IMG/VR virus record: IMGVR_UViG_3300028735_000003
Location: 62,001-126,000 of that record
Length of the DNA stretch: 64,000 nucleotides
Direction: 5' to 3' (one strand)
Position 1 is the first letter of the stretch, and each line of letters opens with the position of its first letter. Position numbers and translations under genes: made by a program. The notes beneath the pieces were generated by a model that was given only the letters and a program-made list of their open reading frames with translations, had not been told where the DNA came from and did not search any database. Below are positions 6,737-63,798 of this stretch, piece after piece.

Positions 6737-7261
6737 TTAATCTTCAATCGGGTCCTTAATGCCACATTTCCAACAATATGACTCGCCTTCAGATACCTTA
6801 GCGCCGCAAACCCTACATGGTACATAAATCTTCTTATAAATTGTAGATTGTTGTGTTGTTTGTTGCATAATTGCAGATTTATCAACAGTTGGTGCAATAA
6901 CTCCCATCAAAGAAACGTTTATTGCAACTGTGTTTTTCCTAGATAGATTCAACCAAATCGTATCATACTCTGCAAGAGCATTAAGATACCCTTTAACCGT
7001 CCTCTTGTCAATGTTTGACTTGATAGTCAAATAGTTATTATGCATAACATGAGTGGGATTATGCATTGATTCTTTGTGCATCACATTAAGAATTGTGAGT
7101 GAAGCAGCTTTCAATGCGTCATGCTCCTCTTGATATAGAAAAACATTGCATATTGCACTTTGCAAGTGGTTCTCTTGCAATACCCAAACCATCATGTAAG
7201 TCGTCCCTTCGTCTTTAAACTCATTCGAATTGTGTCTGTGTACCAGTACACATACACACAA
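6737..7261 (-). CDS. hypothetical protein with C-terminal double zinc ribbon (start uncertain)
   Basis: C-terminal CRVCG...CWKCG. Confidence 0.55.
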   Translation of the reverse strand: MCVCVLVHRHNSNEFKDEGTTYMMVWVLQENHLQSAICNVFLYQEEHDALKAASLTILNVMHKESMHNPTHVMHNNYLTIKSNIDKRTVKGYLNALAEYDTIWLNLSRKNTVAINVSLMGVIAPTVDKSAIMQQTTQQSTIYKKIYVPCRVCGAKVSEGESYCWKCGIKDPIED

Positions 7262-7428
7262 ACTCTATTAACTCTATTATATATCTGTAGATCTGTACAA
7301 TACAGTCAAATTACAACAGTAGCTTTTTCAGTCTCAATGAACTAGATAAGAATCTGAAGCGAAGTAAATCCATATCAATTTATTACATTCATAATCATTA
7401 CTTTAATATGTCACAAAAACATGTGACA

Positions 7429-7791
7429 TCATTCATGGCGTCCCCAACTGTCAATCATGTAGTCTTTTGCGCGCCTCTCATATTCTTGAACCTTCGCGCG
7501 GATGGAAGCTAGTTGCTTCTCTCCATCAGCAACCAATTCAGGATGAGTTACCTTCCATTCATCTATCTTTTCCTGAAGGTAAACTTCTGCTCTCTTAAGA
7601 AAAGTCACAAATGAATCGGCTGTCTGAACCGCAAATACAGACGCAGATATGGCAGAGTCTTCAACACCATTTGCCATATTCACTGCACATTGACCACACG
7701 CAGTTTCAGGAATCTTTGGACATTGCTGCTTTGTTGTACAACCGAATGCAGTAAATGTAATCAAAAACAAACAAGCTGACTTCATATACAT
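7429..7791 (-). CDS. putative lipoprotein
   Basis: MYMKSACLFLITFTAFGC lipobox-like signal; AAGGAG RBS. Confidence 0.6.
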   Translation of the reverse strand: MYMKSACLFLITFTAFGCTTKQQCPKIPETACGQCAVNMANGVEDSAISASVFAVQTADSFVTFLKRAEVYLQEKIDEWKVTHPELVADGEKQLASIRAKVQEYERRAKDYMIDSWGRHE

Positions 7792-7843
7792 GATCGACTC
7801 CTTGAATGGAAACTCCGTACAAATACAATCTTTGAATATAAGT

Positions 7844-8122
7844 CTAATATTGCTGCTTGTATCTCTTACGATAAATACGGACAATCTTTGACCTTAATAC
7901 ATCCTGTTTTGTAACAAGAATTTCCTCGCAGGATGATGGATGCCGGGTAATGTACCCTTTAAACCATCTAACATCCTCTGGTTCCATATAAACTGTACGA
8001 AGATCAACTAGAGAAGTAAACTCTACTTGACCATGATTGTTTCTAAACCATAGTTCTTTACCATCAACTACCAGCTTGATTCCATATACTATGGATTTTG
8101 AAAGTAATTTTCTAGCTTTCAT
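7844..8122 (-). CDS. hypothetical protein
   Basis: 92 aa ORF directly downstream of a tRNA-like element. Confidence 0.55.
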   Translation of the reverse strand: MKARKLLSKSIVYGIKLVVDGKELWFRNNHGQVEFTSLVDLRTVYMEPEDVRWFKGYITRHPSSCEEILVTKQDVLRSKIVRIYRKRYKQQY

Positions 8123-8134
8123 TTTTTTTTACCA

Positions 8135-8202
8135 GGTGCTTCATGACAGAATCGAACTGCCTTCTGCTGAATCCGCCGATTTATCCAATAATCTAATGAA
8201 AC
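8135..8202 (-). ncRNA. tRNA-like element with collapsed anticodon arm
   Basis: Acceptor GTTTCAT/ATGAAGC+ACC, T arm GGCAG-TTCGATT-CTGTC, D arm GAT...ATC; only 16 nt between D and T arms (about 23 expected). Confidence 0.65.
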
Positions 8203-8395
8203 AATAATTAGACATACATATAACTATGTATCATGTTGTCATCCATCATTATCATGCGTATATGAGTGATCAATATAATACCACCAACACAATATCACGA
8301 GAAACATATCAATTTGTATTTTTTTGGTAAAATATATTCAAATGTATTCCTGGCTTATTATTTGGAAGAAGCTCATGAGAAAACCAGGGAAATCA

Positions 8396-8626
8396 TTAGC
8401 TTCTGGTTACGCTTGATATTTTTCTTACAAGCATAGCTTCATAGAGAAACTCTCCTTCATTTCTTATGAAATTTCCACGACTATCAAAACATCTTTTTAC
8501 TTCTTTCTCAAACCATCTAGGAAACTTCTCTTCCTTACATAGTTGAGAAAGCCATTCGTTAGCTTTGAATTCACCATACTCTTGGTATACGTATCTATAT
8601 TTAATTAGAATGTCCAATATGTTCAT
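8396..8626 (-). CDS. hypothetical protein
   Basis: 76 aa ORF. Confidence 0.55.
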   Translation of the reverse strand: MNILDILIKYRYVYQEYGEFKANEWLSQLCKEEKFPRWFEKEVKRCFDSRGNFIRNEGEFLYEAMLVRKISSVTRS

Positions 8627-8635
8627 GGTAATCCA

Positions 8636-8830
8636 TTATTTTGTGCGCCAAAAACATTTTCCGAATTGGATAATGCTTCCTTTGTACGTTTCTTTGCACT
8701 TGTCACGAATTGCCTTAAATGAAGTTCCAACCCATAGCTTCACAGATACATTAGACCCTGGTCCTTCAATCGTTACAAAACAGCAACACTCTCGACTAGG
8801 AGAATAAATAGGTGTGCCATACTTGGACAT
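8636..8830 (-). CDS. hypothetical protein
   Basis: 64 aa; a partial degraded copy of its 3' half lies at about 9815-9880. Confidence 0.5.
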   Translation of the reverse strand: MSKYGTPIYSPSRECCCFVTIEGPGSNVSVKLWVGTSFKAIRDKCKETYKGSIIQFGKCFWRTK

Positions 8831-8898
8831 TGTTCGATTCCTTTTATAATTAGCAATGTACTCATACTAATTGCTGTATCTTATTACATTGCTAAATA

Positions 8899-9372
8899 TC
8901 ACTTCAAAGGTCTCCCACAGTGTAGACTCCAACAATGAGTTGCGTCTACATCGTTCATCTTACCACAATGTGGACATGGAATTTCTTTTTTATCAGAAAC
9001 TTGATCCGGCTTCCCAATTCCATTGTCCAGTCTATGATAGACTCTTCGTTTATATATGTATATACAAATCCAATTATAATGATTGAATCTTGCATCACTT
9101 CCTATGCTATCGAATTTATCAATAGCATCATAATAACTGCCACTATCTAATAACTTTTTGACCTCGACGTAAATTTTATGTTCCTCCACATTTGAAGGAT
9201 TACCAAAGTCATTCTGAATGAACCAATAACTGATTTCATCAATAGCTATGAATATGGCTGATTCTTTTGTATCACAGACAAAAAAACGATTGTTTTTATC
9301 GTCCTTAGTTACAATTTCCATAATATACACATTATCAATATCAATTGGTGAAATGCTCATCATTTCCTCCAA
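8899..9372 (-). CDS. hypothetical protein with C-terminal zinc ribbon, paralog 1
   Basis: Ends CPHCGKMNDVDATHCWSLHCGRPLK, identical tail to 9916..10380. Confidence 0.7.
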   Translation of the reverse strand: MEEMMSISPIDIDNVYIMEIVTKDDKNNRFFVCDTKESAIFIAIDEISYWFIQNDFGNPSNVEEHKIYVEVKKLLDSGSYYDAIDKFDSIGSDARFNHYNWICIYIYKRRVYHRLDNGIGKPDQVSDKKEIPCPHCGKMNDVDATHCWSLHCGRPLK

Positions 9373-9505
9373 CTTTATCTGTTTAGGATAACGCAGTATC
9401 CTAAAACTACGAATACTGATAATGTTATTTCACAAATTACATTGATATCAATTCCAGTCATCATATGACATTTTGATTTCAATATCCACAGACACTTATG
9501 CCATT

Positions 9506-9745
9506 TCAACGTGCAGACTTACTATTCCGAACCTTAAAAAGGTCCAACTTATTCTGAAGCTTTTGGGTCTGCTTCTCCAATCGCTTCTTTTGATTAGCCA
9601 ATTGTTGTTGGCGTACAATCTGTTGCCGCAAAAGTCTACGTAGCAACTTCAATTTCCGAATCTCTTGCTTAATTGGTTCAAAATTATTATCACACATAGA
9701 GTCACCAGTAGTAGTTACATCGACCATATAATTAGACGCCTTCAT
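9506..9745 (-). CDS. basic coiled-coil hypothetical protein
   Basis: 79 aa, Q/K/R/L-rich helix. Confidence 0.55.
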   Translation of the reverse strand: MKASNYMVDVTTTGDSMCDNNFEPIKQEIRKLKLLRRLLRQQIVRQQQLANQKKRLEKQTQKLQNKLDLFKVRNSKSAR

Positions 9746-9915
9746 TGTCTTCTCCCTTGATCTGCTATCTTGAACTTTGTTTATAAGACAATCCTAACGA
9801 TTATTCTCTTATTTTGTACGCCAGAAACATCTTCCGAATTGAATAATATTTTACTTTGTACGTTTCTTTGCACTTATTCTACAATTAGAAATGTATCCGC
9901 ACTAATTGATGAATG

Positions 9916-10380
9916 TTAATACTTTAAGGGTCTCCCACAATGTAGACTCCAACAATGAGTCGCGTCTACATCGTTCATTTTACCACAATGTGGGCATGGA
10001 ATTTCTTTTTTGCCAGAAATTTGTTCTGGCTTCCCAATTCCATTATTCACATGCTTATGAAAAACTTTCTTTCTATAGATAGATATAAAAATCAAACTCT
10101 CATTCAAATTGAGAGTACCATTGTCTTCTATATTATCGAATTCATCAATAGCACAGTAATAATTTCCATTGTCCACCAGTTCTTTGATCCTGGTGTAAAT
10201 TTCATGTTCCTTCACATTCGAAGGATCATCAAAATCATTATTTTTGAACCAATTGTTCATTTCATCAATAGCAGCGAATATTGCAGACTCTTCTGTATCA
10301 TGAATAAAGTGATTGCTATCATCACCGCACTCATCTACAACCTCCAGAACATACACATGATCAATTGTGTAGGTATCCAT
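9916..10380 (-). CDS. hypothetical protein with C-terminal zinc ribbon, paralog 2
   Basis: Start set at MDTYTIDHV after GGAG; aligns along its length with 8899..9372. Confidence 0.7.
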   Translation of the reverse strand: MDTYTIDHVYVLEVVDECGDDSNHFIHDTEESAIFAAIDEMNNWFKNNDFDDPSNVKEHEIYTRIKELVDNGNYYCAIDEFDNIEDNGTLNLNESLIFISIYRKKVFHKHVNNGIGKPEQISGKKEIPCPHCGKMNDVDATHCWSLHCGRPLKY

Positions 10381-10397
10381 TTTTTTCTCCAACTTTA

Positions 10398-10476
10398 GGT
10401 GCTTCGTAGCAGAGTCGAACTGCTTTCTACGGATTGAAAAGTAAATCCGCCGATAGATACAATAGTCTAACGACAC
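10398..10476 (-). ncRNA. tRNA-like element with 12-nt anticodon loop
   Basis: T arm AGCAG-TTCGACT-CTGCT, 3' ACGAAGCACC, stem GCGGA/TCCGT enclosing TTTACTTTTCAA; paralogous to 8135..8202. Confidence 0.6.
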
Positions 10477-10579
10477 AATAATACATATAGCTATATTATT
10501 ACAAGCGCAGCTTCATATGAATTACCATTTATCTATAAGATAACCCCAACGATTATTCCGAAAATTATGTTCCTTTACT

Positions 10580-11509
10580 TTAGTAAATAGTAGGATCTTC
10601 TGTTCCACATTTCCAGCAAGGTGTTTCACCGGCATTCAAACCTGTCCCACAACACTTGCACGGATGGTCATTCTTGTTCTCGACTACAAAAGTTTCTTGG
10701 TGAAAATAGTTGTTTTCACACTCTTCACAATCGTCACAATCACAATCGTCACCATCACAATAGTCACAATCACAATCGTCACCATCACAATCATTACAAG
10801 AAGAATTCAGCATGTCTGACTGACTCTCATGAACATATACAGACCATTTCGTATGAAACTGCCCAGATTCATCTAGATTGAAAAGGTACCTGTTGATACC
10901 TTTTTCCTCCAACTCTCTGGCAATATCTTCTGGTGAGTCTGTCTGACCAAAATGTAACCCGGTTGTATATGAATTCTTATTCACTCTAATATACCCATAG
11001 TCAGACGGATCAAGATCTTTGATAGGATTTGCCTTCTGCGAATTCCCCTCAAATTCCTCAAAATAAGAGGAGGCGTCTTCTTTTATACATTCAACACACG
11101 ACAAATCACAGTCGATGTCTGAAAAATGATATGAAGGTGTCCAACCATATGAATCAGGTTGAATTCGAATGAGCTTTGAACAGTGATCACAAACTGACCA
11201 CTCATCATCCCACTCGCACTCAATACCCATTTTTTCAAATAGCTTGCCAACTCTATTTGGCAAGTCACTTACAAGCTTTCGCGTATGCGTATTGTAATCA
11301 TAACTGGTGATTGTATTCCAATCACCAGTCGCTACTATTCCGCATGCTGGAGTGTCATATCCAGGTTCAGCATAACCATGATGGTGTAGCCGAATCCCTT
11401 CAATTCTATTCTCAACAGAAATAGAAATAGATTTCGCCATATTCTTGGCGATATTCAGAATACGTTCTGCTCGAAGAGCAATGTTCTTGTTTCGTTCGTC
11501 AGAGTTCAT
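10580..11509 (-). CDS. hypothetical protein with Asp/Cys-rich repeat and C-terminal zinc ribbon
   Basis: 309 aa; CNDCDGDDCDCDYCDGDDCDCDDCEEC; ends CKCCG...CWKCG. Confidence 0.75.
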   Translation of the reverse strand: MNSDERNKNIALRAERILNIAKNMAKSISISVENRIEGIRLHHHGYAEPGYDTPACGIVATGDWNTITSYDYNTHTRKLVSDLPNRVGKLFEKMGIECEWDDEWSVCDHCSKLIRIQPDSYGWTPSYHFSDIDCDLSCVECIKEDASSYFEEFEGNSQKANPIKDLDPSDYGYIRVNKNSYTTGLHFGQTDSPEDIARELEEKGINRYLFNLDESGQFHTKWSVYVHESQSDMLNSSCNDCDGDDCDCDYCDGDDCDCDDCEECENNYFHQETFVVENKNDHPCKCCGTGLNAGETPCWKCGTEDPTIY

Positions 11510-11517
11510 GTTTTCGC

Positions 11518-11898
11518 CTACTCTTTTGTGTGCCCATCAAACCAAGGACCATACAATCTGGTCCTTCTCTTTCCTGCCGCTTTTGTGCAGGTACTTGAAG
11601 AGGTTTCCGGATCACTGCAATGCTCTTTCGCCTCTTCAAGAGTAAGTCCACGCTTTATTGTGATATTCCTGCAACTTTTGAAAAAAACTCGGAAAACTTT
11701 GTATGTTTCCATTGTGTACCCATCAAACCAAGGACCATACAATCTGGTCCTTCTCTTTCCTGCCGCTTTTGTGCAGGTACTTGAAGAGGTTTCCGGATCA
11801 CTGCAATGCTCTTTCGCCTCTTCAAGAGTAAGTCCACGCTTTATTGTGATATTCCTTCTACTCTCGAAAAAAAATCTAACGACTTTGTATGTTTCCAT
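11518..11898 (-). CDS. hypothetical protein made of two fused copies of a 62-aa unit
   Basis: 186-bp direct repeat (offset 11533 vs 11719). Confidence 0.7.
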   Translation of the reverse strand: METYKVVRFFFESRRNITIKRGLTLEEAKEHCSDPETSSSTCTKAAGKRRTRLYGPWFDGYTMETYKVFRVFFKSCRNITIKRGLTLEEAKEHCSDPETSSSTCTKAAGKRRTRLYGPWFDGHTKE

Positions 11899-11911
11899 GT
11901 TTTACCTGCTT

Positions 11912-12355
11912 TTATGGGTGGCAGAAACTATTTGTAGACTTGTTCTTTCGAACATATCGCCGCCAAAAATTATTGATCTTTCGGTCCAAATCAGATTTGT
12001 CCCGAAACTCATATCTACCATTTTCGTCCCAAAATTCAACAAAATCATCTACACTTGGGTGCAACCAAGAATGACAAGATGTCTTGCGATTCTCCTTATT
12101 ACATTTCAATAACTCCATACGAGTCACACCACTAGGTGATTCAGAGTCGAAAAACTTACCATACTGGTATGCAAACGCATGTGTATCATTGGAGTACAAT
12201 GAAACATCCTTATATAGGATGTACGCAATATACGCCCAACGATAACAATCCCCTTTGTTTATCTCTGATTCCATACCAACCATCTCTGGGAAAAATTCAC
12301 GAGTAATCAACTTCCCATCGATTTTACCTGGAAGTTTACCTGGAAGTTTACGCAT
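11912..12355 (-). CDS. hypothetical protein
   Basis: 147 aa; AGGAG RBS. Confidence 0.65.
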   Translation of the reverse strand: MRKLPGKLPGKIDGKLITREFFPEMVGMESEINKGDCYRWAYIAYILYKDVSLYSNDTHAFAYQYGKFFDSESPSGVTRMELLKCNKENRKTSCHSWLHPSVDDFVEFWDENGRYEFRDKSDLDRKINNFWRRYVRKNKSTNSFCHP

Positions 12356-12385
12356 GAATGTTCTCCTAGTTTTATGGTTTTGCTA

Positions 12386-12619
12386 TCAATATGGTTGATA
12401 ACAATTCTTCCATTCTTCAGAAGAATTGTACCAACAATACCACGTTCTATTACCACTTGGAGAAATTGTCTCGGCATACCAATTATGTTTATATACCAGT
12501 TGCAGCATTAGTCCAGATCCACTTGGAAGTGAATCCATACCATGCTGCTTTAGCATCCACTTTAGCCGTAAATGCACATGTGCAATGTGCATAAATAATT
12601 CGATCTGAGAAGAATCCAT
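12386..12619 (-). CDS. hypothetical protein
   Basis: 77 aa; AAGG upstream. Confidence 0.5.
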   Translation of the reverse strand: MDSSQIELFMHIAHVHLRLKWMLKQHGMDSLPSGSGLMLQLVYKHNWYAETISPSGNRTWYCWYNSSEEWKNCYQPY

Positions 12620-12622
12620 ACC

Positions 12623-12844
12623 TTATGTTGCCTTCTCAAATTTAGAGAAATATTCAATAATTCCTGTGCGAATCGCATTCACAGTTGCCGCATTCCACCT
12701 GTAGCTTCTTGCATCATATTCCAGATTTGCATACGCAACTATCAAATTTTGATTCACACCAACCGTAAACAGGAAGTTTCGGACAGCTACTGCCTTCACT
12801 CCCCTTCTCGACGCCAATTGCTCAATTCTCTCTGTTGTCAACAT
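12623..12844 (-). CDS. hypothetical protein
   Basis: 73 aa MLTTERIEQLASRRGVK. Confidence 0.6.
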   Translation of the reverse strand: MLTTERIEQLASRRGVKAVAVRNFLFTVGVNQNLIVAYANLEYDARSYRWNAATVNAIRTGIIEYFSKFEKAT

Positions 12845-12880
12845 TATTATACCTATAAAAGCATAAAAAAGAGAGAATAC

Positions 12881-13282
12881 CTATTCATATCTTGGTCGAA
12901 GCGTTGGACGCGCTGGATGATCTTCCAGGCAGACGATTATATCCATGCCTCCCAAAACTGAATAAATGTTCCCATTACGCCTGTGCCCATACAAATCTTC
13001 TAGATATCTACGAAACCAATCAACCTTTTCAGGATTGATGGGTTGCAACTCATAATCCCACTTGTCCGGACCGGCAACCGAAATTGCCTTTACCGGAATT
13101 GAGGCAACAGGGTTACGGTGGTTGTACCACCAACCACCTTCTTCCGGTCCGCCATAATGCCGGGTAATCTCATATGCATTCACATACATAAGAGATTCTG
13201 CACCGGGTTTTACATACCCTTCAGGCGGATAATCATCATCATATTGATGATCATAATCACAATCACAATCATAATCGCACAT
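12881..13282 (-). CDS. hypothetical protein
   Basis: 133 aa, YGGPEEGGWWY motif; GGAG RBS. Confidence 0.7.
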   Translation of the reverse strand: MCDYDCDCDYDHQYDDDYPPEGYVKPGAESLMYVNAYEITRHYGGPEEGGWWYNHRNPVASIPVKAISVAGPDKWDYELQPINPEKVDWFRRYLEDLYGHRRNGNIYSVLGGMDIIVCLEDHPARPTLRPRYE

Positions 13283-13301
13283 TATCGTTTCTCCATATCA
13301 G

Positions 13302-13352
13302 TGCGGTTCAAAAGTCTACACCTGTTTTACTCCACCGTTCCTGGAAACCAAA
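13302..13352. repeat. 51-bp exact repeat, copy 1 (copy 2 at 14497-14547)
   Basis: TGCGGTTCAAAAGTCTACACCTGTTTTACTCCACCGTTCCTGGAAACCAAA identical at both sites, non-coding. Confidence 0.9.
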
Positions 13353-13436
13353 CAAAACAAACATGTATAGACCCGTGAGGCGAACCCCAAAATGGCGGGA
13401 ACCCAATCCAATAGTCCCCCTTTGCATTAGACGTGG

Positions 13437-13602
13437 ATACCATAATCCAAACAAAGTTTGGACTGGTCTAGTCCCATACACACAATCTCTTATGTGTATG
13501 GGGACTGGTTTTACAAGAAAACAACATGATTCCAATACTAAACCAGCAAATATACCGGAATCTAAGTCTATGACAATGTTCAGAATGGTCCTGCCCATAC
13601 TG
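13437..13602. repeat. about 165-bp near-identical structured repeat, copy 1 (copy 2 at 13871-14036)
   Basis: Direct comparison, about 2 differences in the non-coding part; contains several hairpins. Confidence 0.9.
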
Positions 13603-13768
13603 AAACATTGTCTCTTACAACAACAAGAATCTCATCCATGTCCTCAACATGGATATTTTTTCCGCGCATGTATTCAAGGACATCCTCTTTCTTCTGGAGA
13701 CAAAGACTGTCAGGAGCCTTGCATGAAACCGTAATATCGCCGTCAAACGATACACAGATAAGTACCAT
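13580..13768 (-). CDS. 62-aa hypothetical protein, paralog 1 of 3
   Basis: MVLICVSFDGDITVSCKAPDSL...DEILVVVRDNVSVWAGPF; AAGGAG RBS. Confidence 0.65.
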   Translation of the reverse strand: MVLICVSFDGDITVSCKAPDSLCLQKKEDVLEYMRGKNIHVEDMDEILVVVRDNVSVWAGPF

Positions 13769-14013
13769 GATCGTTCTCCTTCCACGCTGAAAACTAGACA
13801 TATATGTATAGACCAGTGGGGAGACCCCCAAAATGGCGGAGACTAAATCTAGTATCACTTTTATACATAAATACCATAATCCAAACAAAGTTTGGACGGG
13901 TCTAGTCCCATACACACAATCTCTTATGTGTATGGGGACTGGTTTTACAAGAAAACAACATGATTCCAATACTAAACCAGCAAATATACCGGAATCTAAG
14001 TCTATAACAATGT

Positions 14014-14205
14014 TCAGAATGGTCTTGTCCATACTGTCACATTGTCATCCACAATAACAAGGATTTCATCAAGGTCATCCGTACTTACGCCTCTTTCTGC
14101 ACAGAGGAATTGAATTACATCCTCCTTTTTCTGGAAACGGAGGCTATACGGAGCCTTACACGAAAAGGTAGCATTATGGTCAAAAGACACACCGACGATA
14201 ACCAT
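14014..14205 (-). CDS. 63-aa hypothetical protein, paralog 2 of 3
   Basis: ...SCKAPYSL...DEILVIVDDNVTVWTRPF; AGGAG RBS. Confidence 0.65.
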   Translation of the reverse strand: MVIVGVSFDHNATFSCKAPYSLRFQKKEDVIQFLCAERGVSTDDLDEILVIVDDNVTVWTRPF

Positions 14206-14231
14206 GACAACTCTCCTATTGTTTGTAAAGT

Positions 14232-14426
14232 TCAGAATGGTCCTGACAATACTGTAATATTGTCGTTGACAATGACCAGAATCTCATCCGTGTCTTCCAG
14301 TGTAACATTATTTGTACGCAAATACTCAAGGATAGCCTCTTTCTTCTGAAGATCCTGAAGACAAAGACTGTCCGTAGCTTTGCATGAAACTGTGGCATCG
14401 CCATCAAGCTCATAAATGAGAACCAT
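14232..14426 (-). CDS. 64-aa hypothetical protein, paralog 3 of 3
   Basis: ...SCKATDSL...DEILVIVNDNITVLSGPF; AGGAG RBS. Confidence 0.65.
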   Translation of the reverse strand: MVLIYELDGDATVSCKATDSLCLQDLQKKEAILEYLRTNNVTLEDTDEILVIVNDNITVLSGPF

Positions 14427-14682
14427 AATATCTCTCCTAGTTGGAATATAAACAAATGTTTGGAAACAGGTTCGACCGCCTATATGAGCTTTTCATTGCG
14501 GTTCAAAAGTCTACACCTGTTTTACTCCACCGTTCCTGGAAACCAAATATATTGTCTTTCAAATTGGAAGGAACACGGTCAGGCTCGATATCGATTCGAC
14601 CGTTTCCCACGTATATTATACGTGTGCATTCTCCCAAGATCACGCATGCAAAATCTTGGGAATAAGCCTATCACATTCCTAG

Positions 14683-14745
14683 TGGGACCAGCCGGATTCG
14701 AACCGACATTTATTCCTTTACCCTAATCATTAGGGCAATGGTCCC
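14683..14745 (-). ncRNA. tRNA-like element lacking an anticodon arm
   Basis: Perfect acceptor GGGACCA/TGGTCCC+A, D-like arm GCCC...GGGT, T arm GTCGG-TTCGAAT-CCGGC; only 12 unpaired nt (AAAGGAATAAAT) between D and T arms. Confidence 0.7.
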
Positions 14746-14824
14746 AAAAGTACATGAACCTATAAGCTTCGGAAGAAAGGGGAATGAAACGGTTCTTATT
14801 CCATTCCCACACACCTACTATGTA

Positions 14825-15205
14825 CTACTTATCTTCCCGCTGGTCGGACCAGCGGGACACTCCGCCACCCTTTCCCTTTCCAATATGGAAAAGGGCGCCG
14901 GATTCACGGGCTCCGGCACGGTCCCGAACATAATTCTGAACTTTTTCAGAAAGAATTCGGAAGTTTTCCGGCTGAACGTTCAGCCTTTGGAGCGAATAGT
15001 TCACCAGGGCAGGCATATTGATCCTAGCCCCAGGGAACTGATCGAAGACAGCATTGACCGCGGCTCCAACCGCTTCATTTTCAGTTTCCATTTCAGCTTG
15101 AAAAGCCAAAAGGTCCTTGGCAAACTTCGCACAAGTAGCATCGAGGTCGATGCTGCCGTTCCCAGCACGCACAACGTAAGTATTGAGGTTGATCGCAGTA
15201 TTCAT
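14825..15205 (-). CDS. hypothetical protein
   Basis: Start set at MNTAINLNTY after GAAGGAG; GC-rich codon usage; GKGKGGGV motif. Confidence 0.75.
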   Translation of the reverse strand: MNTAINLNTYVVRAGNGSIDLDATCAKFAKDLLAFQAEMETENEAVGAAVNAVFDQFPGARINMPALVNYSLQRLNVQPENFRILSEKVQNYVRDRAGARESGALFHIGKGKGGGVSRWSDQREDK

Positions 15206-15430: not shown

Positions 15431-15746
15431 AGCAAAAACTATGCCAACTATACTTCGGCACGATTCTTGCTACGCACGAACACATGACCAATTTGGCATA
15501 TACTTTGCTTCTTTGCAATATACATGCCGTTTTGTATGGCACGATGTTTGCACTTTGCAAACGTTATGCCACCATATATCGTGACACTACATTGCCATAT
15601 ATTGTCATATATTGCCAACAAATATGGCACGAAGTTTGCACCTTTGCAAATGTTATGCCATCAATCGTGAAACTACATTGCTATATATTGTCATATAGTG
15701 TCACGCAAACATGGCACGACGTTTGCACTTTGCAAACGCTATGCCA
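15431..15746. promoter_or_regulatory. sigma54 -24/-12 cluster 1 (10 sites, both strands; includes an 87-88 bp tandem repeat)
   Basis: GG-N10-GC 16-mers at 15431(-), 15456(+), 15494(+), 15514(-), 15537(+), 15556(-), 15625(+), 15645(-), 15712(+), 15731(-), e.g. TGGCACGATGTTTGCA. Confidence 0.85.
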
Positions 15747-16206
15747 CATGATAATTCACCTCTTGTGAAAAGAGGTGCTGGTAAGTGCGGGCGAATAAAA
15801 ATCCGCCATAGTTTATCGTGAACTAGATAACGAAAAACTCTTACTGAGAGAAAGAGGTTCAATCCTCTTCTTCACCCCAGTCCTCGTTTTTCCAGTTTTT
15901 CATAGAATCCTTATGAGCTTTACTCATGCGTCGGGGCTTTTGTGCTTCGCCCCTTGCGACTGAAAGCGCAAAAAGATTGCGCCGACGTTTACGCGGTAAT
16001 TCGATTCTAAAAGACCGATCGCCTTTATGAGTAGCCATTTATCTACTCCTTTTCAAACAAGATTGGGACGCTAAAGCGCCCCAACACTACACCTTACTTC
16101 AAGGAAGTGACGGTTACCAGAACGAACCACAAACTCACTCAAATCGATCTTTCTCATGGGCTTACCCTTTCCTTCAAATCCTGTTTCATGATGGGCTGAT
16201 GTACAA

Positions 16207-25860: not shown

Positions 25861-27669
25861 ATGCCTTTATTTTCAATCATCAATACGCCGGTGGAATTTT
25901 TACAATCGAAATCATGGATTACGAACAAATTTTTTGTTAATTTTGGATACATTGAAGATGGTCCTGGAACAGATTTAAAGTTCTCAAACAGTGCTATGGT
26001 TACTACGCCGATAGAACAGAATCCGTCATTAAAACAATATTTTAAGCCAATTAGCGATCAATACAACCTAAGTTCTTGTGTTGCGAATGCTGTTGCTGAT
26101 TGTTTTGAAGCACAGATGGCTCATAGGAAGGGTTGTGATCCATCTAATATAGAAGATATTTCCAGATTATTTATTTATTGGAACGCCAGGAATCTTTCCA
26201 ATCCACCTACAAGTAACATAGATAAGGGGTCACAGATCAGGTTAGCTTTTGACAGCATGGCACGTTACGGAGCGCCGAGTGAGAAGACATATCCATATGA
26301 TTTATCGAATGTGAACGTAAGACCACCTATTATTGCATATCGCGAAGCTATTAAACATAGGATTAGTAAGTTTTACAGAATAGACGTGGGAGGGATTAAT
26401 AGAATAGTTCAAATCAAGCAAGCATTATCTGCTGGTAATCCAGTTGTATTTGGGACTAAAGTAGCGGAGAGTTTTAAGTATGTAAACAGTGACGAAGTAG
26501 TGGTTAATCCTGGTGGTGGGTGGATAGGTGGACATGCTATGTGTATAGTGGGGTGGTCTGAAGACAAGCAAGCATTTGAAGTTAGAAATTCTTGGGGATG
26601 TTATGATGACAAGACAGAGATTTTGACAAATGATGGTTGGAAATTATTTAAAGATGTAACGTATAATGATAAATTTGCGACATTAAACTCTGATACGCAT
26701 CATTTGGAATTTCAAAAAGCATCAAAAATACATGAGTATGATTTTAGCGGCAAACTTTATTATTTCAAAGATGGACATATAGATCTTGCAGTTACTCCAA
26801 ATCACAGAATGTACGTAGGAGACTATAAAGACAAAGACGACACATCATGGAGTATTAAAAGAGCTGATGAAATTTCAAAGCCTATTTATTTTAAAAAAGA
26901 CGTTATAAACATTGTTCCGGACGTAAGTCACTTTAATATTGAAGACAAAACAGTTGAAGCTGATACGTGGTTAGAATTTATGGGTTATTTTCTATCATGT
27001 GGATACAATTGTGAAAAACATAATAAAACAACTATTTACGAGACAATTGGGTTAAATAAAGATAAGATTAATCATTGTTTGAAAAAACTTCCATTTAAAT
27101 TTTCTAAAGACAAAAAATCTATAAATCACAAAAGTATAAATAGATGGCATTATACAACGAAAGAATTATATAAATATCTTTCTATCTTTGGAAAAGAGGA
27201 TGAAAAATTCATACCACGCTATCTTTTAGAATTATCTCGTCGTCAAAGTAAGATTTTACTAGACGCTATGATGCTTGGTAATGGCACAAAAGTCAAAGGA
27301 AAATATATTTATCATACTTCATCCAAACAATTAGCAGATGATATTCAGGAGTTAGCTTTGCGCTGTAATTTATCGGCAGATATAAGAATTACAAACAGAG
27401 TTAGATCAAAAAATAATAAACACGCAGAATATAAGATAAAAATTAAAACTACAAAAACTATGTCACAATTCAATAATGAACCGATTCAGAAGTCATATAC
27501 TGGTAAAGTTTATTGTGTGACAGTACCAAATGGTCTATTATATGTTAGGAGAAATGGTAAAGCAGTATGGTGTGGAAATTCTGATTGGGGAGTTAATGGA
27601 TATTGTTGGATGGATAAGAACTATATAGCATCTAGCATAACTTCAGACATTTGGGTACCAACTGTTTAA
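25861..27669 (+). CDS. papain-like (C1) cysteine peptidase containing an intein
   Basis: QYNLSSCVANA (catalytic Cys), GGHAMCIVGW (His), VRNSWG (Asn), then intein, then SDWGVNGYCWM. Confidence 0.9.
   Translation: MPLFSIINTPVEFLQSKSWITNKFFVNFGYIEDGPGTDLKFSNSAMVTTPIEQNPSLKQYFKPISDQYNLSSCVANAVADCFEAQMAHRKGCDPSNIEDISRLFIYWNARNLSNPPTSNIDKGSQIRLAFDSMARYGAPSEKTYPYDLSNVNVRPPIIAYREAIKHRISKFYRIDVGGINRIVQIKQALSAGNPVVFGTKVAESFKYVNSDEVVVNPGGGWIGGHAMCIVGWSEDKQAFEVRNSWGCYDDKTEILTNDGWKLFKDVTYNDKFATLNSDTHHLEFQKASKIHEYDFSGKLYYFKDGHIDLAVTPNHRMYVGDYKDKDDTSWSIKRADEISKPIYFKKDVINIVPDVSHFNIEDKTVEADTWLEFMGYFLSCGYNCEKHNKTTIYETIGLNKDKINHCLKKLPFKFSKDKKSINHKSINRWHYTTKELYKYLSIFGKEDEKFIPRYLLELSRRQSKILLDAMMLGNGTKVKGKYIYHTSSKQLADDIQELALRCNLSADIRITNRVRSKNNKHAEYKIKIKTTKTMSQFNNEPIQKSYTGKVYCVTVPNGLLYVRRNGKAVWCGNSDWGVNGYCWMDKNYIASSITSDIWVPTV
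26599..27579 (+). mobile_element. intein (327 aa) with degenerate LAGLIDADG domain
   Basis: Begins CYDDKTEILT, block B VTPNH, ends VYCVTVPNGLLYVRRNGKAVWCGN, +1 Ser. Confidence 0.9.
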
Positions 27670-30560: not shown

Positions 30561-30644
30561 TGCTTAAGAGTGGATTCGAACCACTACGTCCTTTCGAGCA
30601 TAAGTTTTTAAGACTTCCCTGGCTACCAATTACAGCATTACTCC
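30561..30644 (-). pseudogene. tRNA-Leu(TAA) with non-pairing 5' acceptor strand
   Basis: D arm CTG...CAG, loop CTTAAAA, variable arm, T arm AGTGG-TTCGAAT-CCACT; 5' GGAGTAA does not pair with 3' CTTAAGC. Confidence 0.75.
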
Positions 30645-45516: not shown

Positions 45517-45907
45517 TTTATCCTGCCAATCATATTAACTACCAACATATACATGCCAAGATAAGCGCAGGAGTTAATCTATAATATCTTTTATGTATAC
45601 AATTATTCATGATATAACTGATAGTTTATCAACATAATAATTAACAGAGCCAATTATATTTAAGCTATCACAATATATCATATATTATAGAAGATTTTAT
45701 GTCTGGAAGCGTTATGCTAATTTTACAAACTTAATCAATAAATTTAATGTACTTTATTATATTATATTATTTTTATCTTTATTTTTTACGGATTGACATT
45801 ATTTGCGTGTGTGGTTATATTCTATTTGTCGATGTTTATTCGATTTTATAATAAAATTATAAATTATTTTGTGTGAGTATATCGTTGACGCATCAGGAGA
45901 ATTATTT

Positions 45908-46921
45908 ATGGACTATGTTATAAGAGACGGGTTGGTATTTGACGACGTTTTATTAGTTCCGAAATACTCCACCATAGATAGCAGGACTACCGGTGTAGAT
46001 GTTTCAGTTAAGATTAAAAATGTCACATATCTTCACCCTATAATTCCTGCTAATATGCAAACGATAACTGGACATGAAATGGCTCAGGCTGTTTCTAGAA
46101 GTGGTGGATTAGCTATTGTAAACAGATTTATGCCTTTTGAGTACCAATTAAATATCGCTAAAAAAGAAAAAGATAATTTGAATAATATTGGATTTTCGGT
46201 TGGTGTAAAACAAGAATATAAGGATTATGTTAAGATATTTAGTGAGTATGGTGTAAATATATTCTGTATAGATATTGCTCATGGAGATTCAAAAGGCGGT
46301 GTCAATATGACATCGTGGATTCGTGACAATTATCCTGAAGCTACTATAATAGCAGGCAATGTTGCTACTGGTAATGGAGCATTAAGGTTATGGAATGCCG
46401 GTGCAGATATTGTAAAAGTTGGAGTTGGTCCTGGTAGTTTATGTACTACTAGAATTGAAACTGGTAACGGAGTGCCACAATTAACAGCCTTAATGGATGT
46501 CGCAGAAGCCAGAAAATATCGATTACAGGATTCAAAATCTGCTTTTATTATCGCAGATGGTGGTATAAAGAATGCTGGAGATATTGTAAAAGCATTATGT
46601 TTTGCTGATATGGTTATGGCGGGGAATATATTTGCCGGATGCCTAGAAACACCTGGTACAGTTCTATCTATCATGGGTAAGACATATAAGGAGTACAGGG
46701 GCAGCTCAACGCATAAAACAAGTCATGTGGAAGGCGTAGCGGCAATAGTCCCAACAAAAGGAACATTCAAATCCATCCTAGATAAATTAATAGAAGGATT
46801 GCGCTCTGGTTGTTCATATCAGGGTTCTGCGAATTTACAAGAACTTAAAGAAGATCCTGAGTTTATTAGAATAACAAACGCAGGGTTAATTGAGAGTTAT
46901 CCTCACAACATATCGGGTTAA
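45908..46921 (+). CDS. IMP dehydrogenase / GMP reductase family (no CBS domains)
   Basis: LVFDDVLLVP, IDIAHG, KVGVGPGSLCTTR, ADGGI, EGV; IMPDH versus GMPR not resolved. Confidence 0.9.
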   Translation: MDYVIRDGLVFDDVLLVPKYSTIDSRTTGVDVSVKIKNVTYLHPIIPANMQTITGHEMAQAVSRSGGLAIVNRFMPFEYQLNIAKKEKDNLNNIGFSVGVKQEYKDYVKIFSEYGVNIFCIDIAHGDSKGGVNMTSWIRDNYPEATIIAGNVATGNGALRLWNAGADIVKVGVGPGSLCTTRIETGNGVPQLTALMDVAEARKYRLQDSKSAFIIADGGIKNAGDIVKALCFADMVMAGNIFAGCLETPGTVLSIMGKTYKEYRGSSTHKTSHVEGVAAIVPTKGTFKSILDKLIEGLRSGCSYQGSANLQELKEDPEFIRITNAGLIESYPHNISG

Positions 46922-53483: not shown

Positions 53484-54698
53484 TTACTTGCAAGCATTAT
53501 CAGCAGCTATTATTCCTGTTACTGCTGCTGCTAGTATGCCTATTATACCAGCAGATTCGCCAGCAACAAACATTCCGTCCACATCTGATGATAGATTATT
53601 GCCTATATTAATTTTAGGAGACATAGGAATAATTGTAGGTACATAAAAATAAGCTTTTGTTATTATTTCTGGAATAATAATCGATAAATCTGTGATCGCT
53701 TGTTTAAGCCAGCTATATTCTGGAATAATGGAAATTTTACTTTTATTTGCAAATAGAGCAGAAATTCTTTCCTTTATTATTCTATCATTAGCTAAAACAA
53801 ATGTTAATTTTCCAATTCTATCTGTTTGTTCAAATCCAGCATTTGGGAAATATCTATTGCCTATTATATTAAAGGATACCTTATCAGTCTTCCATCTGTT
53901 TTCATTAGATCTAAAAGCCGATATAGCCATATCTAAATGATCTTCTGGTATAACAGTGCCATACCAATTGAACGGACCAACCTCAAGAGATTCATCATCT
54001 TTAATAAGATTGCACGAAGATTTGTTAAGATCCTTTAAAACATCAGAGTTCATTTCCACTCTAATTCCAAATTTAGCTATATCATTATTATTGACAATTC
54101 CAAACTTGTTATACAATTCATTTGTCCATCTCCAACCGCTTCTACCAACTGCTAGAATTATCTTTTTGCATCTAAATTCTTCTTCTCCAGTTGATACAAC
54201 AAACATAGCATTTTTCTTGTACAAACTTTGTATTTCATTATCGAACGAATATTTAATGTTTTTATTTTGTTCAATAATTTCAGACATATATTTAGATAAA
54301 GCATGAATATCTTTAGGACATATCTGATAATGATCATTTAAAAATATAGAGTATTTATTTTTTCTTAATCTTTTTATAAAAGAGGCTGATGGAGACTTAT
54401 CTTTGATTAGTTTAAATGTATTAATATTGGATAGGACATTATTGAAATAATCGTATGCATATTTGCACTTTCTCATTCCAACTATATCAGAAACATTCAA
54501 CAGATTATTTGTGTAAAGTTTTCCATCACTATTGGGAAGGCAACCTAGCCATCCTTCTAGTTGACGACGACGTTTCATAGGAGGTCGTCCCAAATCAAAT
54601 AGTATAGTCTTTACATTTTTATGTTTTTGAGCTAAGCGCAAGGCTGCAAAAGATCCGGCAACGCCTGCCCCAATAATACCGATGTCATAATTGTTCAT
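53484..54698 (-). CDS. FAD-dependent oxidoreductase
   Basis: IGIIGAGVAG Rossmann motif, ILAVGRSG, C-terminal FVAGE. Confidence 0.85.
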   Translation of the reverse strand: MNNYDIGIIGAGVAGSFAALRLAQKHKNVKTILFDLGRPPMKRRRQLEGWLGCLPNSDGKLYTNNLLNVSDIVGMRKCKYAYDYFNNVLSNINTFKLIKDKSPSASFIKRLRKNKYSIFLNDHYQICPKDIHALSKYMSEIIEQNKNIKYSFDNEIQSLYKKNAMFVVSTGEEEFRCKKIILAVGRSGWRWTNELYNKFGIVNNNDIAKFGIRVEMNSDVLKDLNKSSCNLIKDDESLEVGPFNWYGTVIPEDHLDMAISAFRSNENRWKTDKVSFNIIGNRYFPNAGFEQTDRIGKLTFVLANDRIIKERISALFANKSKISIIPEYSWLKQAITDLSIIIPEIITKAYFYVPTIIPMSPKINIGNNLSSDVDGMFVAGESAGIIGILAAAVTGIIAADNACK

Positions 54699-57302: not shown

Positions 57303-58547
<1,245 letters not shown>

Positions 58548-63463: not shown

Positions 63464-63477
63464 GATTATCTCTTTAC

Positions 63478-63798
63478 TTAAATTGCCCAGGTTGCTATGA
63501 CTCTTATTGTAGGTTGAACTAATGTCCCAGGACCAGAATAATGTGCTCCAGTGAAATCTGGAGAACCAGTTACTGTCCAACCAACGTTATTTGTTCCATT
63601 ATAACCCACCATATGATAATATCTGACTTGTGTTGTTCCTGATCCTGCACCAACAGAGCAATAAACTGATGCCAATTTAGCATTTGGTAATGATGACTTA
63701 ACTGGGTCTTTAAACTCATGTTTTCCATCATATCTTACATCAGGTGCTGAAGAAGATACCGCAACATATGGAAGAGCTTCACCACTTAAATCAGCCAT
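63478..63798 (-). CDS. hypothetical protein (structural cluster)
   Basis: Start set at MADLSGE, overlapping the upstream stop. Confidence 0.6.

What the first reader, a model, noticed from the sequence alone, without database searches (positions are those of the whole stretch)
8135..10476. Paralogous tRNA-like pair with remodelled anticodon arms (one collapsed, one expanded)
Seen: both keep acceptor, D and T arms and share GGCGGATT, AGAA, GCAGTTCGA and GAAGCACC. In 8135..8202 about 7 nt of the anticodon arm are missing; in 10398..10476 the loop is 12 nt. Each ends 12-17 nt before a start codon. Established: host defences such as PrrC and PARIS cut tRNA anticodon loops, and phages counter with their own tRNAs. 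Inference: nuclease decoys, RNase P/Z processing punctuation for mRNAs, or simple decay.
Basis: partly seen in the sequence, partly recalled or inferred. Interest (0 to 1): 0.6.

Follow-up and report, generated by a model that had tools for sequence, protein, structure and literature searches.

The report
Non-decoding tRNA relics in a jumbo phage
Two neighbouring tRNA-shaped elements in a 354-kb phage genome are copies of one tRNA gene that stopped decoding after a 5-base duplication in its anticodon loop, yet their other stems have been kept paired, so they are either slowly decaying relics or, slightly more likely, RNA-processing signals.

Summary
On the minus strand, 8135-8202 (TL1) and 10398-10476 (TL2) are paralogous tRNA-like elements in intergenic gaps of a 353,765-bp phage record. 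ARAGORN calls neither. Rfam tRNA scores them 35.8 and 25.3 bits. A close relative (L030) carries, at TL1's position, a perfect cloverleaf with the same 12-nt loop as TL2. That loop reads as a tandem duplication of TTTTC inside a TTTTCAA (Glu-UUC type) anticodon loop. So the expanded form is ancestral, and TL1 is a later 11-nt deletion of it. The two forms are not independent remodellings. All three copies also end ACC-T instead of the CCA encoded by 8 of the phage's 9 real tRNAs. They are therefore not adaptors. The stems are nevertheless maintained: 4 of TL1's 5 substitutions form two compensatory pairs, and TL2 has one more. A third, unrelated element with no anticodon arm (TL3, 14683-14745) is conserved in three related contigs. 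Against function, TL1 evolves at the noncoding rate and its T arm is thermodynamically out-competed, and TL2 has a broken D stem and an acceptor mismatch. The family was found in only two closely related genomes, and no expression data could be obtained. Best reading, about 0.45: retained RNase P/Z-type processing elements. Plain decay: about 0.37.

The parts
8135..8202 (-). TL1: a 66-nt tRNA-like element (G1 at 8202, discriminator A at 8137) followed by CC. It has a 7/7 acceptor stem, a 4-bp D stem with the GG loop, and a 5-bp T stem with a TTCGATT loop. The anticodon arm is collapsed.
   Evidence: Rfam tRNA 35.8 bits. Strict acceptor plus T-arm scan. Alignment to L030 and TL2. Missed by ARAGORN and by Rfam's filters when the whole 64-kb window is scanned at once.
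8166..8176 (-). The 11-nt remnant of TL1's anticodon arm (GCGGATTCAGC). Relative to L030 it has lost 11 of the 12 loop bases and carries a C-to-A change in the 3' stem strand.
   Evidence: Alignments. The freed GCGGAU strand is predicted to pair with the 3' strand of the T arm, leaving the T stem at about 2% in the ensemble.
10398..10476 (-). TL2: a 77-nt tRNA-like element (G1 at 10476, discriminator A at 10400) followed by CC. It has an intact T arm and a 5-bp anticodon stem with a 12-nt loop. The acceptor stem is 6/7, and the D hairpin is shifted by 2 nt.
   Evidence: Rfam tRNA 25.3 bits, below the gathering score. Folds as a cloverleaf-like structure. Pair counts.
10434..10445 (-). TL2's 12-nt loop, TTTACTTTTCAA. 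L030 has TTTTCTTTTCAA, which is TTTTC twice followed by AA. This reads as a 5-nt tandem duplication in a TTTTCAA (anticodon UUC) loop.
   Evidence: ARAGORN reads the L030 copy as tRNA-Glu(ttc), but only by accepting a 3-bp anticodon stem.
8203..8228 (-). The 5' flank of TL1 that belongs to the duplicated unit (ATAGTTATATGTAT...TTATT).
   Evidence: Shared with TL2 and L030. It is not a genome-wide motif and no sigma-70-type promoter was called there.
10477..10495 (-). The matching 5' flank of TL2 (ATAGCTATATGTATTATT).
7844..8122 (-). A 92-aa ORF of unknown function whose ATG lies 12 nt after TL1's ACC.
   Evidence: The L030 ortholog is 89% identical, and there the spacer is about 49 nt longer.
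9916..10380 (-). A 154-aa ORF with a C-terminal zinc ribbon, a paralog of 8899-9363. Its ATG lies 17 nt after TL2's ACC and is preceded by a GGAG ribosome-binding site.
14683..14745 (-). TL3: an unrelated 63-nt tRNA-like element. It has a 7-bp acceptor stem, a 9-bp hairpin in place of the D arm, a 10-nt linker instead of an anticodon arm, and a 5-bp T arm with a TTCGAAT loop. It is followed by CTA.
   Evidence: Rfam tRNA 33.8 bits. Fold z-score -4.56. Orthologs in L042, L045 and L053 show only structure-preserving changes.
14556..14815 (-). A conserved, highly structured noncoding stretch around TL3. It holds a terminator-like hairpin at 14780-14808, then TL3, then several downstream hairpins.
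   Evidence: About 98% identical in L042 and L045, while the upstream gene is about 88-90% identical. Fold z-score -4.83. Hairpin called.

Best explanation
TL1 and TL2 are two copies of one phage tRNA gene, most simply a tRNA-Glu(UUC) type. In the common ancestor of this phage and its relative L030, that gene lost its decoding function through a 5-nt tandem duplication (TTTTC twice) in the anticodon loop, and its encoded CCA became CCT. These steps are shown or directly inferred from sequence. The 12-nt-loop form is ancestral. TL1, at the original position upstream of the 92-aa ORF, later lost 11 loop bases. TL2 is a more diverged copy sitting at a mosaic junction upstream of a 154-aa paralog. 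The proposed mechanism is inferred, not shown. Because the elements are embedded in same-strand polycistronic transcripts, the acceptor/T-arm (and D-arm) shape continues to be recognised by host RNase P at the 5' side. At the 3' side it would be recognised by RNase Z or RNase E plus exonucleases, and possibly by the phage's own CCA-adding enzymes. Each element would then act as a cis processing site that separates the upstream message from the downstream ORF, whose start lies 12-17 nt beyond. It would work like a plant-mitochondrial t-element rather than as an adaptor. TL3, a separate element with no anticodon arm 4.2 kb away, would be a better-conserved example of the same use.
For: Origin and non-decoding state:
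- The TL1, TL2 and L030 alignments show a shared body, a shared 5' flank and a shared ACC-T end.
- L030's element at TL1's syntenic position scores 46.7 bits and folds as a perfect cloverleaf with the 12-nt loop (z -3.66).
- 8 of the 9 real tRNAs in this genome encode CCA.

Structure is maintained after loss of decoding:
- TL1 differs from L030 by 5 substitutions. Four of them form two compensatory pairs (acceptor 6:67 G-C to A-U, D stem 13:22 C-G to U-A), and no acceptor, D or T pair is broken.
- The probability of this by chance is about 4e-4 under a generic model and about 0.7-0.9% under an extreme model that allows only GC-to-AT changes.
- TL2 adds a compensatory T-stem pair (G-C to A-U) and a G.U to G-C change.
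- Overall, 93.7% of cells are paired against 24-47% when partners are slid, and 3 pairs changed on both sides, a value reached by 14 of 500 shuffles.
- TL2 is 85% identical to L030's element, while the adjoining gene is 74-76% identical.

Context:
- All three elements are intergenic and on the same strand as the genes.
- TL1 and TL2 lie 15 and 20 nt before the next ATG, against 43-1016 nt for the 9 real tRNAs.
- TL3 keeps 100% pairing in four genomes. A relative with 5 substitutions in 62 nt has none that breaks a stem, and TL3 sits in a noncoding block more conserved than the neighbouring gene.
- Among about 327 tRNAs in 20 other phage loci, no armless element with perfect acceptor and T arms was seen.
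- The phage encodes two CCA-adding-family proteins and an RNA ligase.

Established knowledge:
- RNase P measures the acceptor/T-stem stack and the elbow, not the anticodon arm (PMC4919913).
- t-elements direct RNase P/Z cleavage of mRNAs (PMC1920247).
Against: - There is no expression or end-mapping data.
- TL1 diverges from L030 at 7.6%, like the flanking noncoding DNA (9.7%) and faster than the flanking ORFs (3-5%).
- In TL1 the deletion frees a strand that is predicted to out-compete the T stem. The tRNA-like fold is -12.9 kcal/mol against an MFE of -15.6, and the T stem forms in about 2% of the ensemble.
- TL2 has an acceptor mismatch, a broken canonical D stem and a lost D-loop G, and its Rfam score is below the gathering score.
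- The short distance to the start codon is not conserved in L030.
- The family was found in only two genomes that are 90-95% identical.
- The covariation evidence rests on three sequences.
Confidence: 0.45

Rival explanations
1. The elements are plain tRNA pseudogenes in neutral decay. A tRNA-Glu-type gene was knocked out by the 5-nt loop duplication and has no remaining role. TL1 and TL2 are two relics picking up further lesions, and their tRNA-like look only reflects recent origin.
For: - The ancestor already carried two inactivating lesions, the 12-nt loop and CCA changed to CCT.
- Both copies in this genome carry extra private damage. TL1 has the 11-nt deletion, a stem mismatch and a predicted loss of the T arm. 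TL2 has an acceptor mismatch, a broken D stem and a lost G in the D-loop GG.
- TL1's substitution rate equals the noncoding rate.
- The distribution is limited to two near-identical genomes.
- The genome holds another decayed tRNA fragment, at window 30569-30637.
Against: - Four of TL1's five substitutions form two compensatory pairs, with P about 4e-4 to 9e-3, and TL2's T stem adds another.
- No T-arm or T-loop damage is present in any copy.
- TL2 is better conserved than its neighbouring gene.
- The decayed tRNA-Leu fragment shows the opposite pattern: its acceptor is broken and its anticodon arm is kept.
- The armless TL3 is clearly conserved.
Confidence: 0.37
2. The elements are trans-acting decoys or sponges. 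After excision they would bind host factors that recognise the tRNA body, such as defence nucleases, toxins acting on the acceptor end, or tRNA-modifying or CCA-adding enzymes. They could not themselves be disabled at an anticodon loop.
For: - The acceptor, T and (in TL1 and L030) elbow nucleotides are kept while the anticodon arm is dispensable.
- TL3 shows the same design.
- The phage invests in tRNA biology: 9 tRNAs, a tmRNA, an RNA ligase and two CCA-adding-family genes.
- tRNA-targeting defences and phage tRNA counter-measures are established (PMC10264068, PMC11464382, PMC12445682).
Against: - Nothing tested here is specific to this idea.
- Known phage counter-measures are functional replacement tRNAs, not decoys (PMC11464382, PMC12445682).
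- A decoy for an anticodon nuclease would be expected to keep an anticodon loop, which TL1 and TL3 lack.
- There is no expression evidence.
Confidence: 0.12
3. The 12-nt-loop form is still an adaptor. It could be an unusual tRNA-Glu using the weak alternative fold that ARAGORN draws, a frameshifting or hopping tRNA, or a gene that is switched back on when the 5-nt repeat slips out.
For: - ARAGORN calls the L030 copy tRNA-Glu(ttc) at default settings.
- The phage has no other tRNA-Glu.
- In L030 the two TTTTC units are a perfect repeat.
Against: - The ARAGORN fold needs a 3-bp anticodon stem with two mismatches and U at position 37. The thermodynamic fold is a 5-7-bp stem with a 12- or 8-nt loop.
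- Known frameshift suppressors have 8-9-nt loops on 5-bp stems (own knowledge).
- All copies lack A76.
- TL2's repeat is interrupted by a T-to-A change, and TL1 has no loop at all.
Confidence: 0.04

Closest known systems
t-elements of plant mitochondria (tRNA-like processing signals; Forner et al. 2007, PMC1920247)
   Same: Both are non-canonical cloverleaves derived from tRNAs. Both keep a conserved T arm, lie next to mRNA starts or ends in polycistronic transcripts, and cannot decode. t-elements direct RNase P and RNase Z cuts, and some receive CCA-type additions.
   Different: t-elements are organellar and their ends have been mapped experimentally. The elements here are in a phage and nothing has been mapped. 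The T-loop context is AGTTCGAYTCT rather than the GGTTCRANYCC used to find t-elements.
Ordinary phage tRNA genes and phage tRNAs with anticodon-loop changes that evade host nucleases (PMC10264068, PMC11464382, PMC12445682)
   Same: They share the genomic setting (a phage tRNA-rich region on the gene strand), the same overall body, and changes concentrated in the anticodon arm.
   Different: Those tRNAs keep a 7-nt loop, an anticodon and CCA, and they still decode. TL1, TL2 and TL3 cannot, having a 12-nt loop or no arm, and no A76.
tRNA pseudogenes
   Same: They arise from a tRNA gene through an inactivating indel, and standard tRNA finders miss them.
   Different: The damage is not spread at random. 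Stems are kept by compensatory changes, and one unrelated armless element is conserved across four genomes.
mascRNA-type tRNA-like 3'-end processing (MALAT1 / MEN-beta; own knowledge) and the tRNA-like domains of tmRNA and bacterial Y RNA YrlA (PMC4201824)
   Same: These are tRNA-shaped modules used for RNase P cleavage or protein binding without any anticodon function. For TL3, a stable hairpin lies just upstream of the putative RNase P site.
   Different: There is no sequence or Rfam relationship: searches give only tRNA hits. Those RNAs have other defining domains (triple helix, mRNA-like domain, Ro-binding stem) that are absent here.

Membership tests
Canonical decoding tRNA (Rfam RF00005) | 7-bp acceptor stem plus discriminator base | tested here: met
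   TL1 has 7/7 pairs. TL2 has 6/7, with a G.A mismatch at 3:70. Both have discriminator A.
Canonical decoding tRNA (Rfam RF00005) | 5-bp T stem with a T-loop of the TTCRANY type | tested here: met
   TL1 has GGCAG/CTGTC with TTCGATT. TL2 has AGCAG/CTGCT with TTCGACT. Caveat: in TL1 the T stem is predicted at only about 2% of the thermodynamic ensemble.
Canonical decoding tRNA (Rfam RF00005) | 5-bp anticodon stem closing a 7-nt loop with U33 and an anticodon | tested here: not met
   TL1 has an 11-nt remnant with at most 2 bp. TL2 has a 5-bp stem with a 12-nt loop, or a 7-bp stem with an 8-nt loop.
Canonical decoding tRNA (Rfam RF00005) | 4-bp D stem with the G18 G19 loop | tested here: inconclusive
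   Met in TL1 and in L030. Not met in TL2, where 2 of 4 pairs are broken, one G is lost and only a shifted hairpin remains.
Canonical decoding tRNA (Rfam RF00005) | Detection score: Rfam gathering score of 29 bits, or an ARAGORN call | tested here: inconclusive
   TL1 scores 35.8 bits, but only in a small search space. TL2 scores 25.3 bits. ARAGORN calls neither.
Canonical decoding tRNA (Rfam RF00005) | 3' CCA, as encoded by this phage's own tRNAs | tested here: not met
   8 of the 9 real tRNAs end in NCCA. TL1, TL2 and L030 end in ACCT, and TL3 in ACTA.
t-element-like processing signal | Non-canonical cloverleaf with an intact T arm and acceptor, in sense orientation inside a transcription unit | tested here: met
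   The elements are intergenic and on the same strand as all neighbouring ORFs. Structure.
t-element-like processing signal | RNA ends of the flanking messages coincide with the element's borders, and RNase P/Z cleave there | not testable with these tools
No biochemical test is available here.
Neutral tRNA pseudogene | Derived from a tRNA gene by an inactivating lesion | tested here: met
   A 5-nt tandem duplication in the loop, and CCA changed to CCT.
Neutral tRNA pseudogene | Substitutions fall without regard to base pairing | tested here: not met
   TL1 has two compensatory pairs among 5 substitutions, with P about 4e-4 to 9e-3. TL2 has one compensatory pair in the T stem. The sample is small, at three sequences.
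Neutral tRNA pseudogene | Evolves at the neutral (noncoding) rate | tested here: met
   TL1 differs from L030 by 7.6%, against 9.7% for the flanking noncoding DNA and 3-5% for the flanking ORFs.
Frameshift-suppressor tRNA with an expanded anticodon loop | 8-9-nt loop on a normal 5-bp stem, with a chargeable CCA end | tested here: not met
   The loop is 12 nt, or 8 nt on a 7-bp stem, and there is no A76.
tmRNA / YrlA tRNA-like domains | Match to the family model, plus an mRNA-like or Ro-binding domain | tested here: not met
   No Rfam hit other than tRNA at these sites. The phage's tmRNA lies elsewhere.

The most novel reading that the evidence does not exclude
This jumbo-phage lineage deliberately keeps tRNA-shaped RNAs that cannot decode. 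TL3 has no anticodon arm and is conserved in four genomes inside an ultra-conserved noncoding block. The Glu-derived TL family has a 12-nt loop or a collapsed arm. These would act as RNase P/Z-dependent punctuation of phage messages, or as excised small RNAs that occupy host factors recognising the tRNA body. That would be the first t-element-like or armless-tRNA system described in a bacteriophage, and standard tRNA finders overlook it.
Probability: 0.3. Interest if true: 0.7.

Novelty: new variant of a known kind. Interest (0 to 1): 0.42.

Why it matters
Phage tRNAs are now seen as weapons in a conflict over host tRNA-cutting defences. A set of phage tRNA-shaped RNAs that have given up decoding but keep their processing-relevant shape would add a second use for such genes: organising phage transcripts, or occupying host tRNA-binding factors. 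It would also show how a tRNA embedded in an operon can outlive its adaptor role, as in plant mitochondria. There is a practical point as well. ARAGORN finds none of these elements, and Rfam's speed filters drop the best one in a whole-window scan. Such elements are therefore probably under-counted in phage genomes. If the elements are only decaying relics, the finding is ordinary. It would then be a dated example of tRNA gene loss by a 5-base slippage.

Tried and rejected
**Searches for more relatives**
- Megablast of 7000-15000 against GenBank phages gave no match.
- The search for related loci with the 309-aa neighbour found nothing.
- Five IUPAC pattern scans of viral contigs were run. A T-arm/acceptor pattern hit only genuine tRNA-Val, Thr and Phe genes in other phages. 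The D-arm, loop, gapped-arm and TL3 patterns gave nothing.
- One metagenome scan and one genome-contig scan with a gapped pattern that would have caught 7-nt-loop, 12-nt-loop or collapsed versions returned only the phage's own genome and chance hits.
- Only the word-based protein search led to relatives: L030, L031, L042-L045 and L053-L056.

**Expression**

**Ideas rejected**
- The shared 5' flank is not a phage promoter motif. It is not repeated elsewhere in the genome, and no sigma-70-type site is called there.
- There is not a larger hidden family of such elements in this genome. A relaxed scan gives no further credible hits above the shuffle level.
- Similarity of the body to tRNA-Val(UAC) is not evidence of identity, because it was forced by the search pattern.
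- TL3 does not extend to more distant relatives. It is absent from the 66-70% relatives L043, L044, L055 and L056.

**Neighbouring proteins**
- The 92-aa and 154-aa zinc-ribbon ORFs and their neighbours have no informative Pfam or PHROG match.

Full report
**Setting.** The window is bases 62001-126000 of a 353,765-bp IMG/VR virus record, CheckV 79% complete. It is an AT-rich jumbo phage. ARAGORN finds nine tRNAs on the whole record, all on the minus strand: Lys-UUU, Pro-UGG, Tyr-GUA, Leu-CAA, Leu-UAA, two Ile-UAU, Arg-CCU and Arg-UCU. It also finds a tmRNA. The phage encodes two PolyA_pol/CCA-adding-family proteins and an RNA ligase. ARAGORN finds no tRNA inside the window.

Read on the minus strand, 8202-8137 (TL1) and 10476-10400 (TL2) match the Rfam tRNA model from end to end. 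TL1 scores 35.8 bits and TL2 25.3 bits against a gathering score of 29.
- TL1 has a 7/7 acceptor stem, a 4-bp D stem with a GG loop and a 5-bp T stem with a TTCGATT loop. Only 11 nt remain where the 17-nt anticodon arm should be.
- TL2 has an intact T arm and a 5-bp anticodon stem closing a 12-nt loop. It also has a G.A acceptor mismatch, two broken D-stem pairs and a lost D-loop G. A hairpin shifted by two bases remains.
- Both elements are followed by CC-T. The next ATG follows 12 nt (TL1) or 17 nt (TL2) later.
- A strict scan for a 7/7 acceptor plus a 5/5 T stem recovers all nine tRNAs, TL1, a third element (TL3) and two AT-rich hits. Shuffled genomes give 0-4 hits. A relaxed scan finds no further credible members.
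- When all 64 kb are scanned at once, Rfam's filters lose TL1. Such elements are therefore easy to miss.

**A relative gives the history.** The 154-aa ORF downstream of TL2 led to a 39.5-kb metagenomic contig, L030. It is collinear with the window and 90-95% identical in DNA.
- At TL1's position, upstream of the 92-aa ORF (89% identical protein), L030 carries a 77-nt element that scores 46.7 bits. All four stems are perfect and the fold z-score is -3.66.
- Its anticodon loop is 12 nt, TTTTCTTTTCAA. TL2's loop differs at one base.
- The loop is TTTTC twice followed by AA. That is a 5-nt tandem duplication inside a canonical TTTTCAA loop with anticodon UUC (Glu).
- ARAGORN does call the L030 copy tRNA-Glu(ttc). 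It does so only by drawing a 3-bp anticodon stem with two mismatches and a long variable loop. The thermodynamic fold is a 5-7-bp stem with a 12- or 8-nt loop.
- The expanded loop is therefore ancestral. TL1 arose from it by deleting 11 of the 12 loop bases and changing one stem base.
- All three copies share ACC-T at the 3' end, whereas 8 of the 9 real tRNAs encode CCA. The common ancestor already carried two disabling changes.
- L030 has no element at TL2's position. TL2 sits exactly at a break in homology, next to a gene that is only 74-76% identical to either L030 paralog. TL2 itself is 85% identical to the L030 element. It probably arrived with a segment from a more distant relative.

**Decay or constraint?**

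Evidence for constraint:
- TL1 differs from the L030 element by five substitutions. Four of them form two compensatory pairs: acceptor 6:67 G-C to A-U, and D stem 13:22 C-G to U-A. The fifth lies in the disrupted anticodon stem. No acceptor, D or T pair is broken.
- Random placement of five substitutions gives two or more compensatory doubles with probability about 4e-4. An extreme model that allows only G/C-to-A/T changes gives about 0.7-0.9%.
- TL2 has a compensatory T-stem pair (G-C to A-U) and a G.U to G-C change.
- Over the three sequences, 93.7% of cells are paired, against 24-47% when partners are slid. Three pairs changed on both sides, a value reached by 14 of 500 shuffles.

Evidence for decay:
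- TL1 diverges from L030 by 7.6%. The flanking noncoding DNA diverges by 9.7% and the flanking ORFs by only 3-5%.
- The deletion frees the strand GCGGAU, which is predicted to pair with the 3' strand of the T arm. The tRNA-like fold is then 2.7 kcal/mol worse than the MFE, and the T stem forms in about 2% of the ensemble.
- TL2 carries several private lesions.
- The family was found in only these two genomes, despite pattern scans of viral, metagenome and genome collections.

**A third element changes the odds.** TL3 (14745-14683, minus strand, 33.8 bits) is unrelated in sequence to TL1 and TL2.
- It has a perfect 7-bp acceptor stem, a 9-bp hairpin, a 10-nt linker in place of the anticodon arm, and a perfect T arm. 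Its fold z-score is -4.56.
- It is identical or nearly identical in L042 and L045.
- In L053, where the neighbouring protein is 84% identical, TL3 has five substitutions in 62 nt and none breaks a pair. Two turn G.U pairs into Watson-Crick pairs, one lies in a hairpin loop and two lie in the linker. Meanwhile the 5' flank has been replaced by a different hairpin.
- The 260-nt noncoding block around TL3 is about 98% identical in L042 and L045, whereas the upstream gene is about 88-90% identical. The block is strongly structured, with z -4.83.
- Relatives at 66-70% protein identity lack TL3.
- This lineage therefore maintains at least one tRNA-shaped RNA that cannot decode.
- As a control, about 440 kb of other phage loci carrying 327 ARAGORN tRNAs contained five irregular tRNAs that ARAGORN missed. 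All five kept an anticodon arm and CCA.
- A decayed tRNA-Leu-like fragment elsewhere in the window shows the opposite damage pattern: its acceptor is broken and its anticodon arm is kept.

**Most likely mechanism.** All three elements are intergenic and lie on the gene strand. TL1 and TL2 lie 15 and 20 nt before the next ATG, while the nine real tRNAs lie 43-1016 nt before the next ORF. RNase P reads the acceptor/T-stem stack and the elbow, not the anticodon arm (PMC4919913). tRNA-like t-elements in plant mitochondria direct RNase P and RNase Z cuts that form mRNA ends (PMC1920247). I therefore think the elements most likely persist as cis processing sites. In that role they would release the upstream message and leave the downstream ORF with a short leader, and the excised piece might be CCA-tailed. 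This step is inferred and none of it was observed.

Confidence in each reading:
- Retained processing sites: about 0.45.
- Neutral decay: about 0.37.
- Decoy for factors that bind the tRNA body: about 0.12. It is possible given current work on tRNA-targeting defences (PMC10264068, PMC11464382, PMC12445682), but nothing here supports it specifically.
- A remaining decoding role: about 0.04.

**What could not be done.** I did not try to obtain the same result another way, so there is no expression evidence. The comparative evidence rests on three sequences for TL1/TL2 and four for TL3.

**Verdict.** The elements are non-decoding derivatives of a Glu-type tRNA gene. Together with TL3 they look like a phage counterpart of t-elements, but for TL1 and TL2 plain pseudogene decay is nearly as likely. 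Interest is moderate.

Noticed in passing
window 14683-14745 (-), within 14556-14815: A third tRNA-like element (TL3) has no anticodon arm. It sits in a 260-nt, strongly structured noncoding block that is more conserved among relatives than the neighbouring gene. The hairpins downstream of TL3 match no Rfam family.
   Followed up: partly
window 30569-30637 (-): A tRNA-Leu(UAA)-like fragment (Rfam 22.1 bits, model positions 8-63) keeps its D, anticodon, long variable and T arms but has a broken acceptor stem. It is probably a decayed tRNA.
   Followed up: partly
window 15536-15747: Three tandem repeats of about 87 nt, each containing a 37-nt palindrome (ATGGCACG...ATGCCAC), lie upstream of the 126-139-aa gene. 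This region produced spurious microRNA-family hits in Rfam.
   Followed up: no
window 8899-9363 (-), 9916-10380 (-), about 9795-9880: Two tandem paralogous 154-aa proteins carry a C-terminal zinc ribbon, and a truncated copy of the 64-aa ORF lies between them. Further tandem duplications lie at 13.3-14.2 kb. The region is mosaic relative to L030.
   Followed up: partly
G000 306537-306898 (-); 26314-26682 (+); 254476-254868 (-); 59302-59775 (-): The phage encodes a tmRNA (tag ANDNAFVPMAQAA), two PolyA_pol/CCA-adding-family proteins, and an RNA ligase next to a duplicated tRNA-Ile(UAU) pair.
   Followed up: no
L053 518-946: In this relative, the homolog of the gene upstream of TL3 matches the database protein only if TGA is read as Trp. 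This may reflect a gene-caller choice or a different genetic code in that relative. No sign of recoding was seen in the window.
   Followed up: no
window 53484-54698 (-), 45869-46921 (+), 57303-58547 (+), 62477-63580 (-): Auxiliary genes in the window include a GidA/TrmFO-like FAD protein (weak N-terminal match only), a GMP reductase/IMPDH-family protein, and two collagen-repeat proteins.
   Followed up: no
window 9375-9400 (-); L030 4375-4400; L031 about 105-135: Paralogs of the 154-aa gene that lack a tRNA-like element upstream have a short stem-loop just before their ribosome-binding site. A structured element upstream of the start may be a shared feature of these genes.
   Followed up: no
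L001 8287-8354; L002 6388-6462, 8144-8239, 9789-9867; L003 5135-5233: Other phage tRNA arrays fetched as controls contain irregular tRNA-like genes with perfect acceptor and T stems that ARAGORN does not call. Four of the five end in CCA.
   Followed up: no
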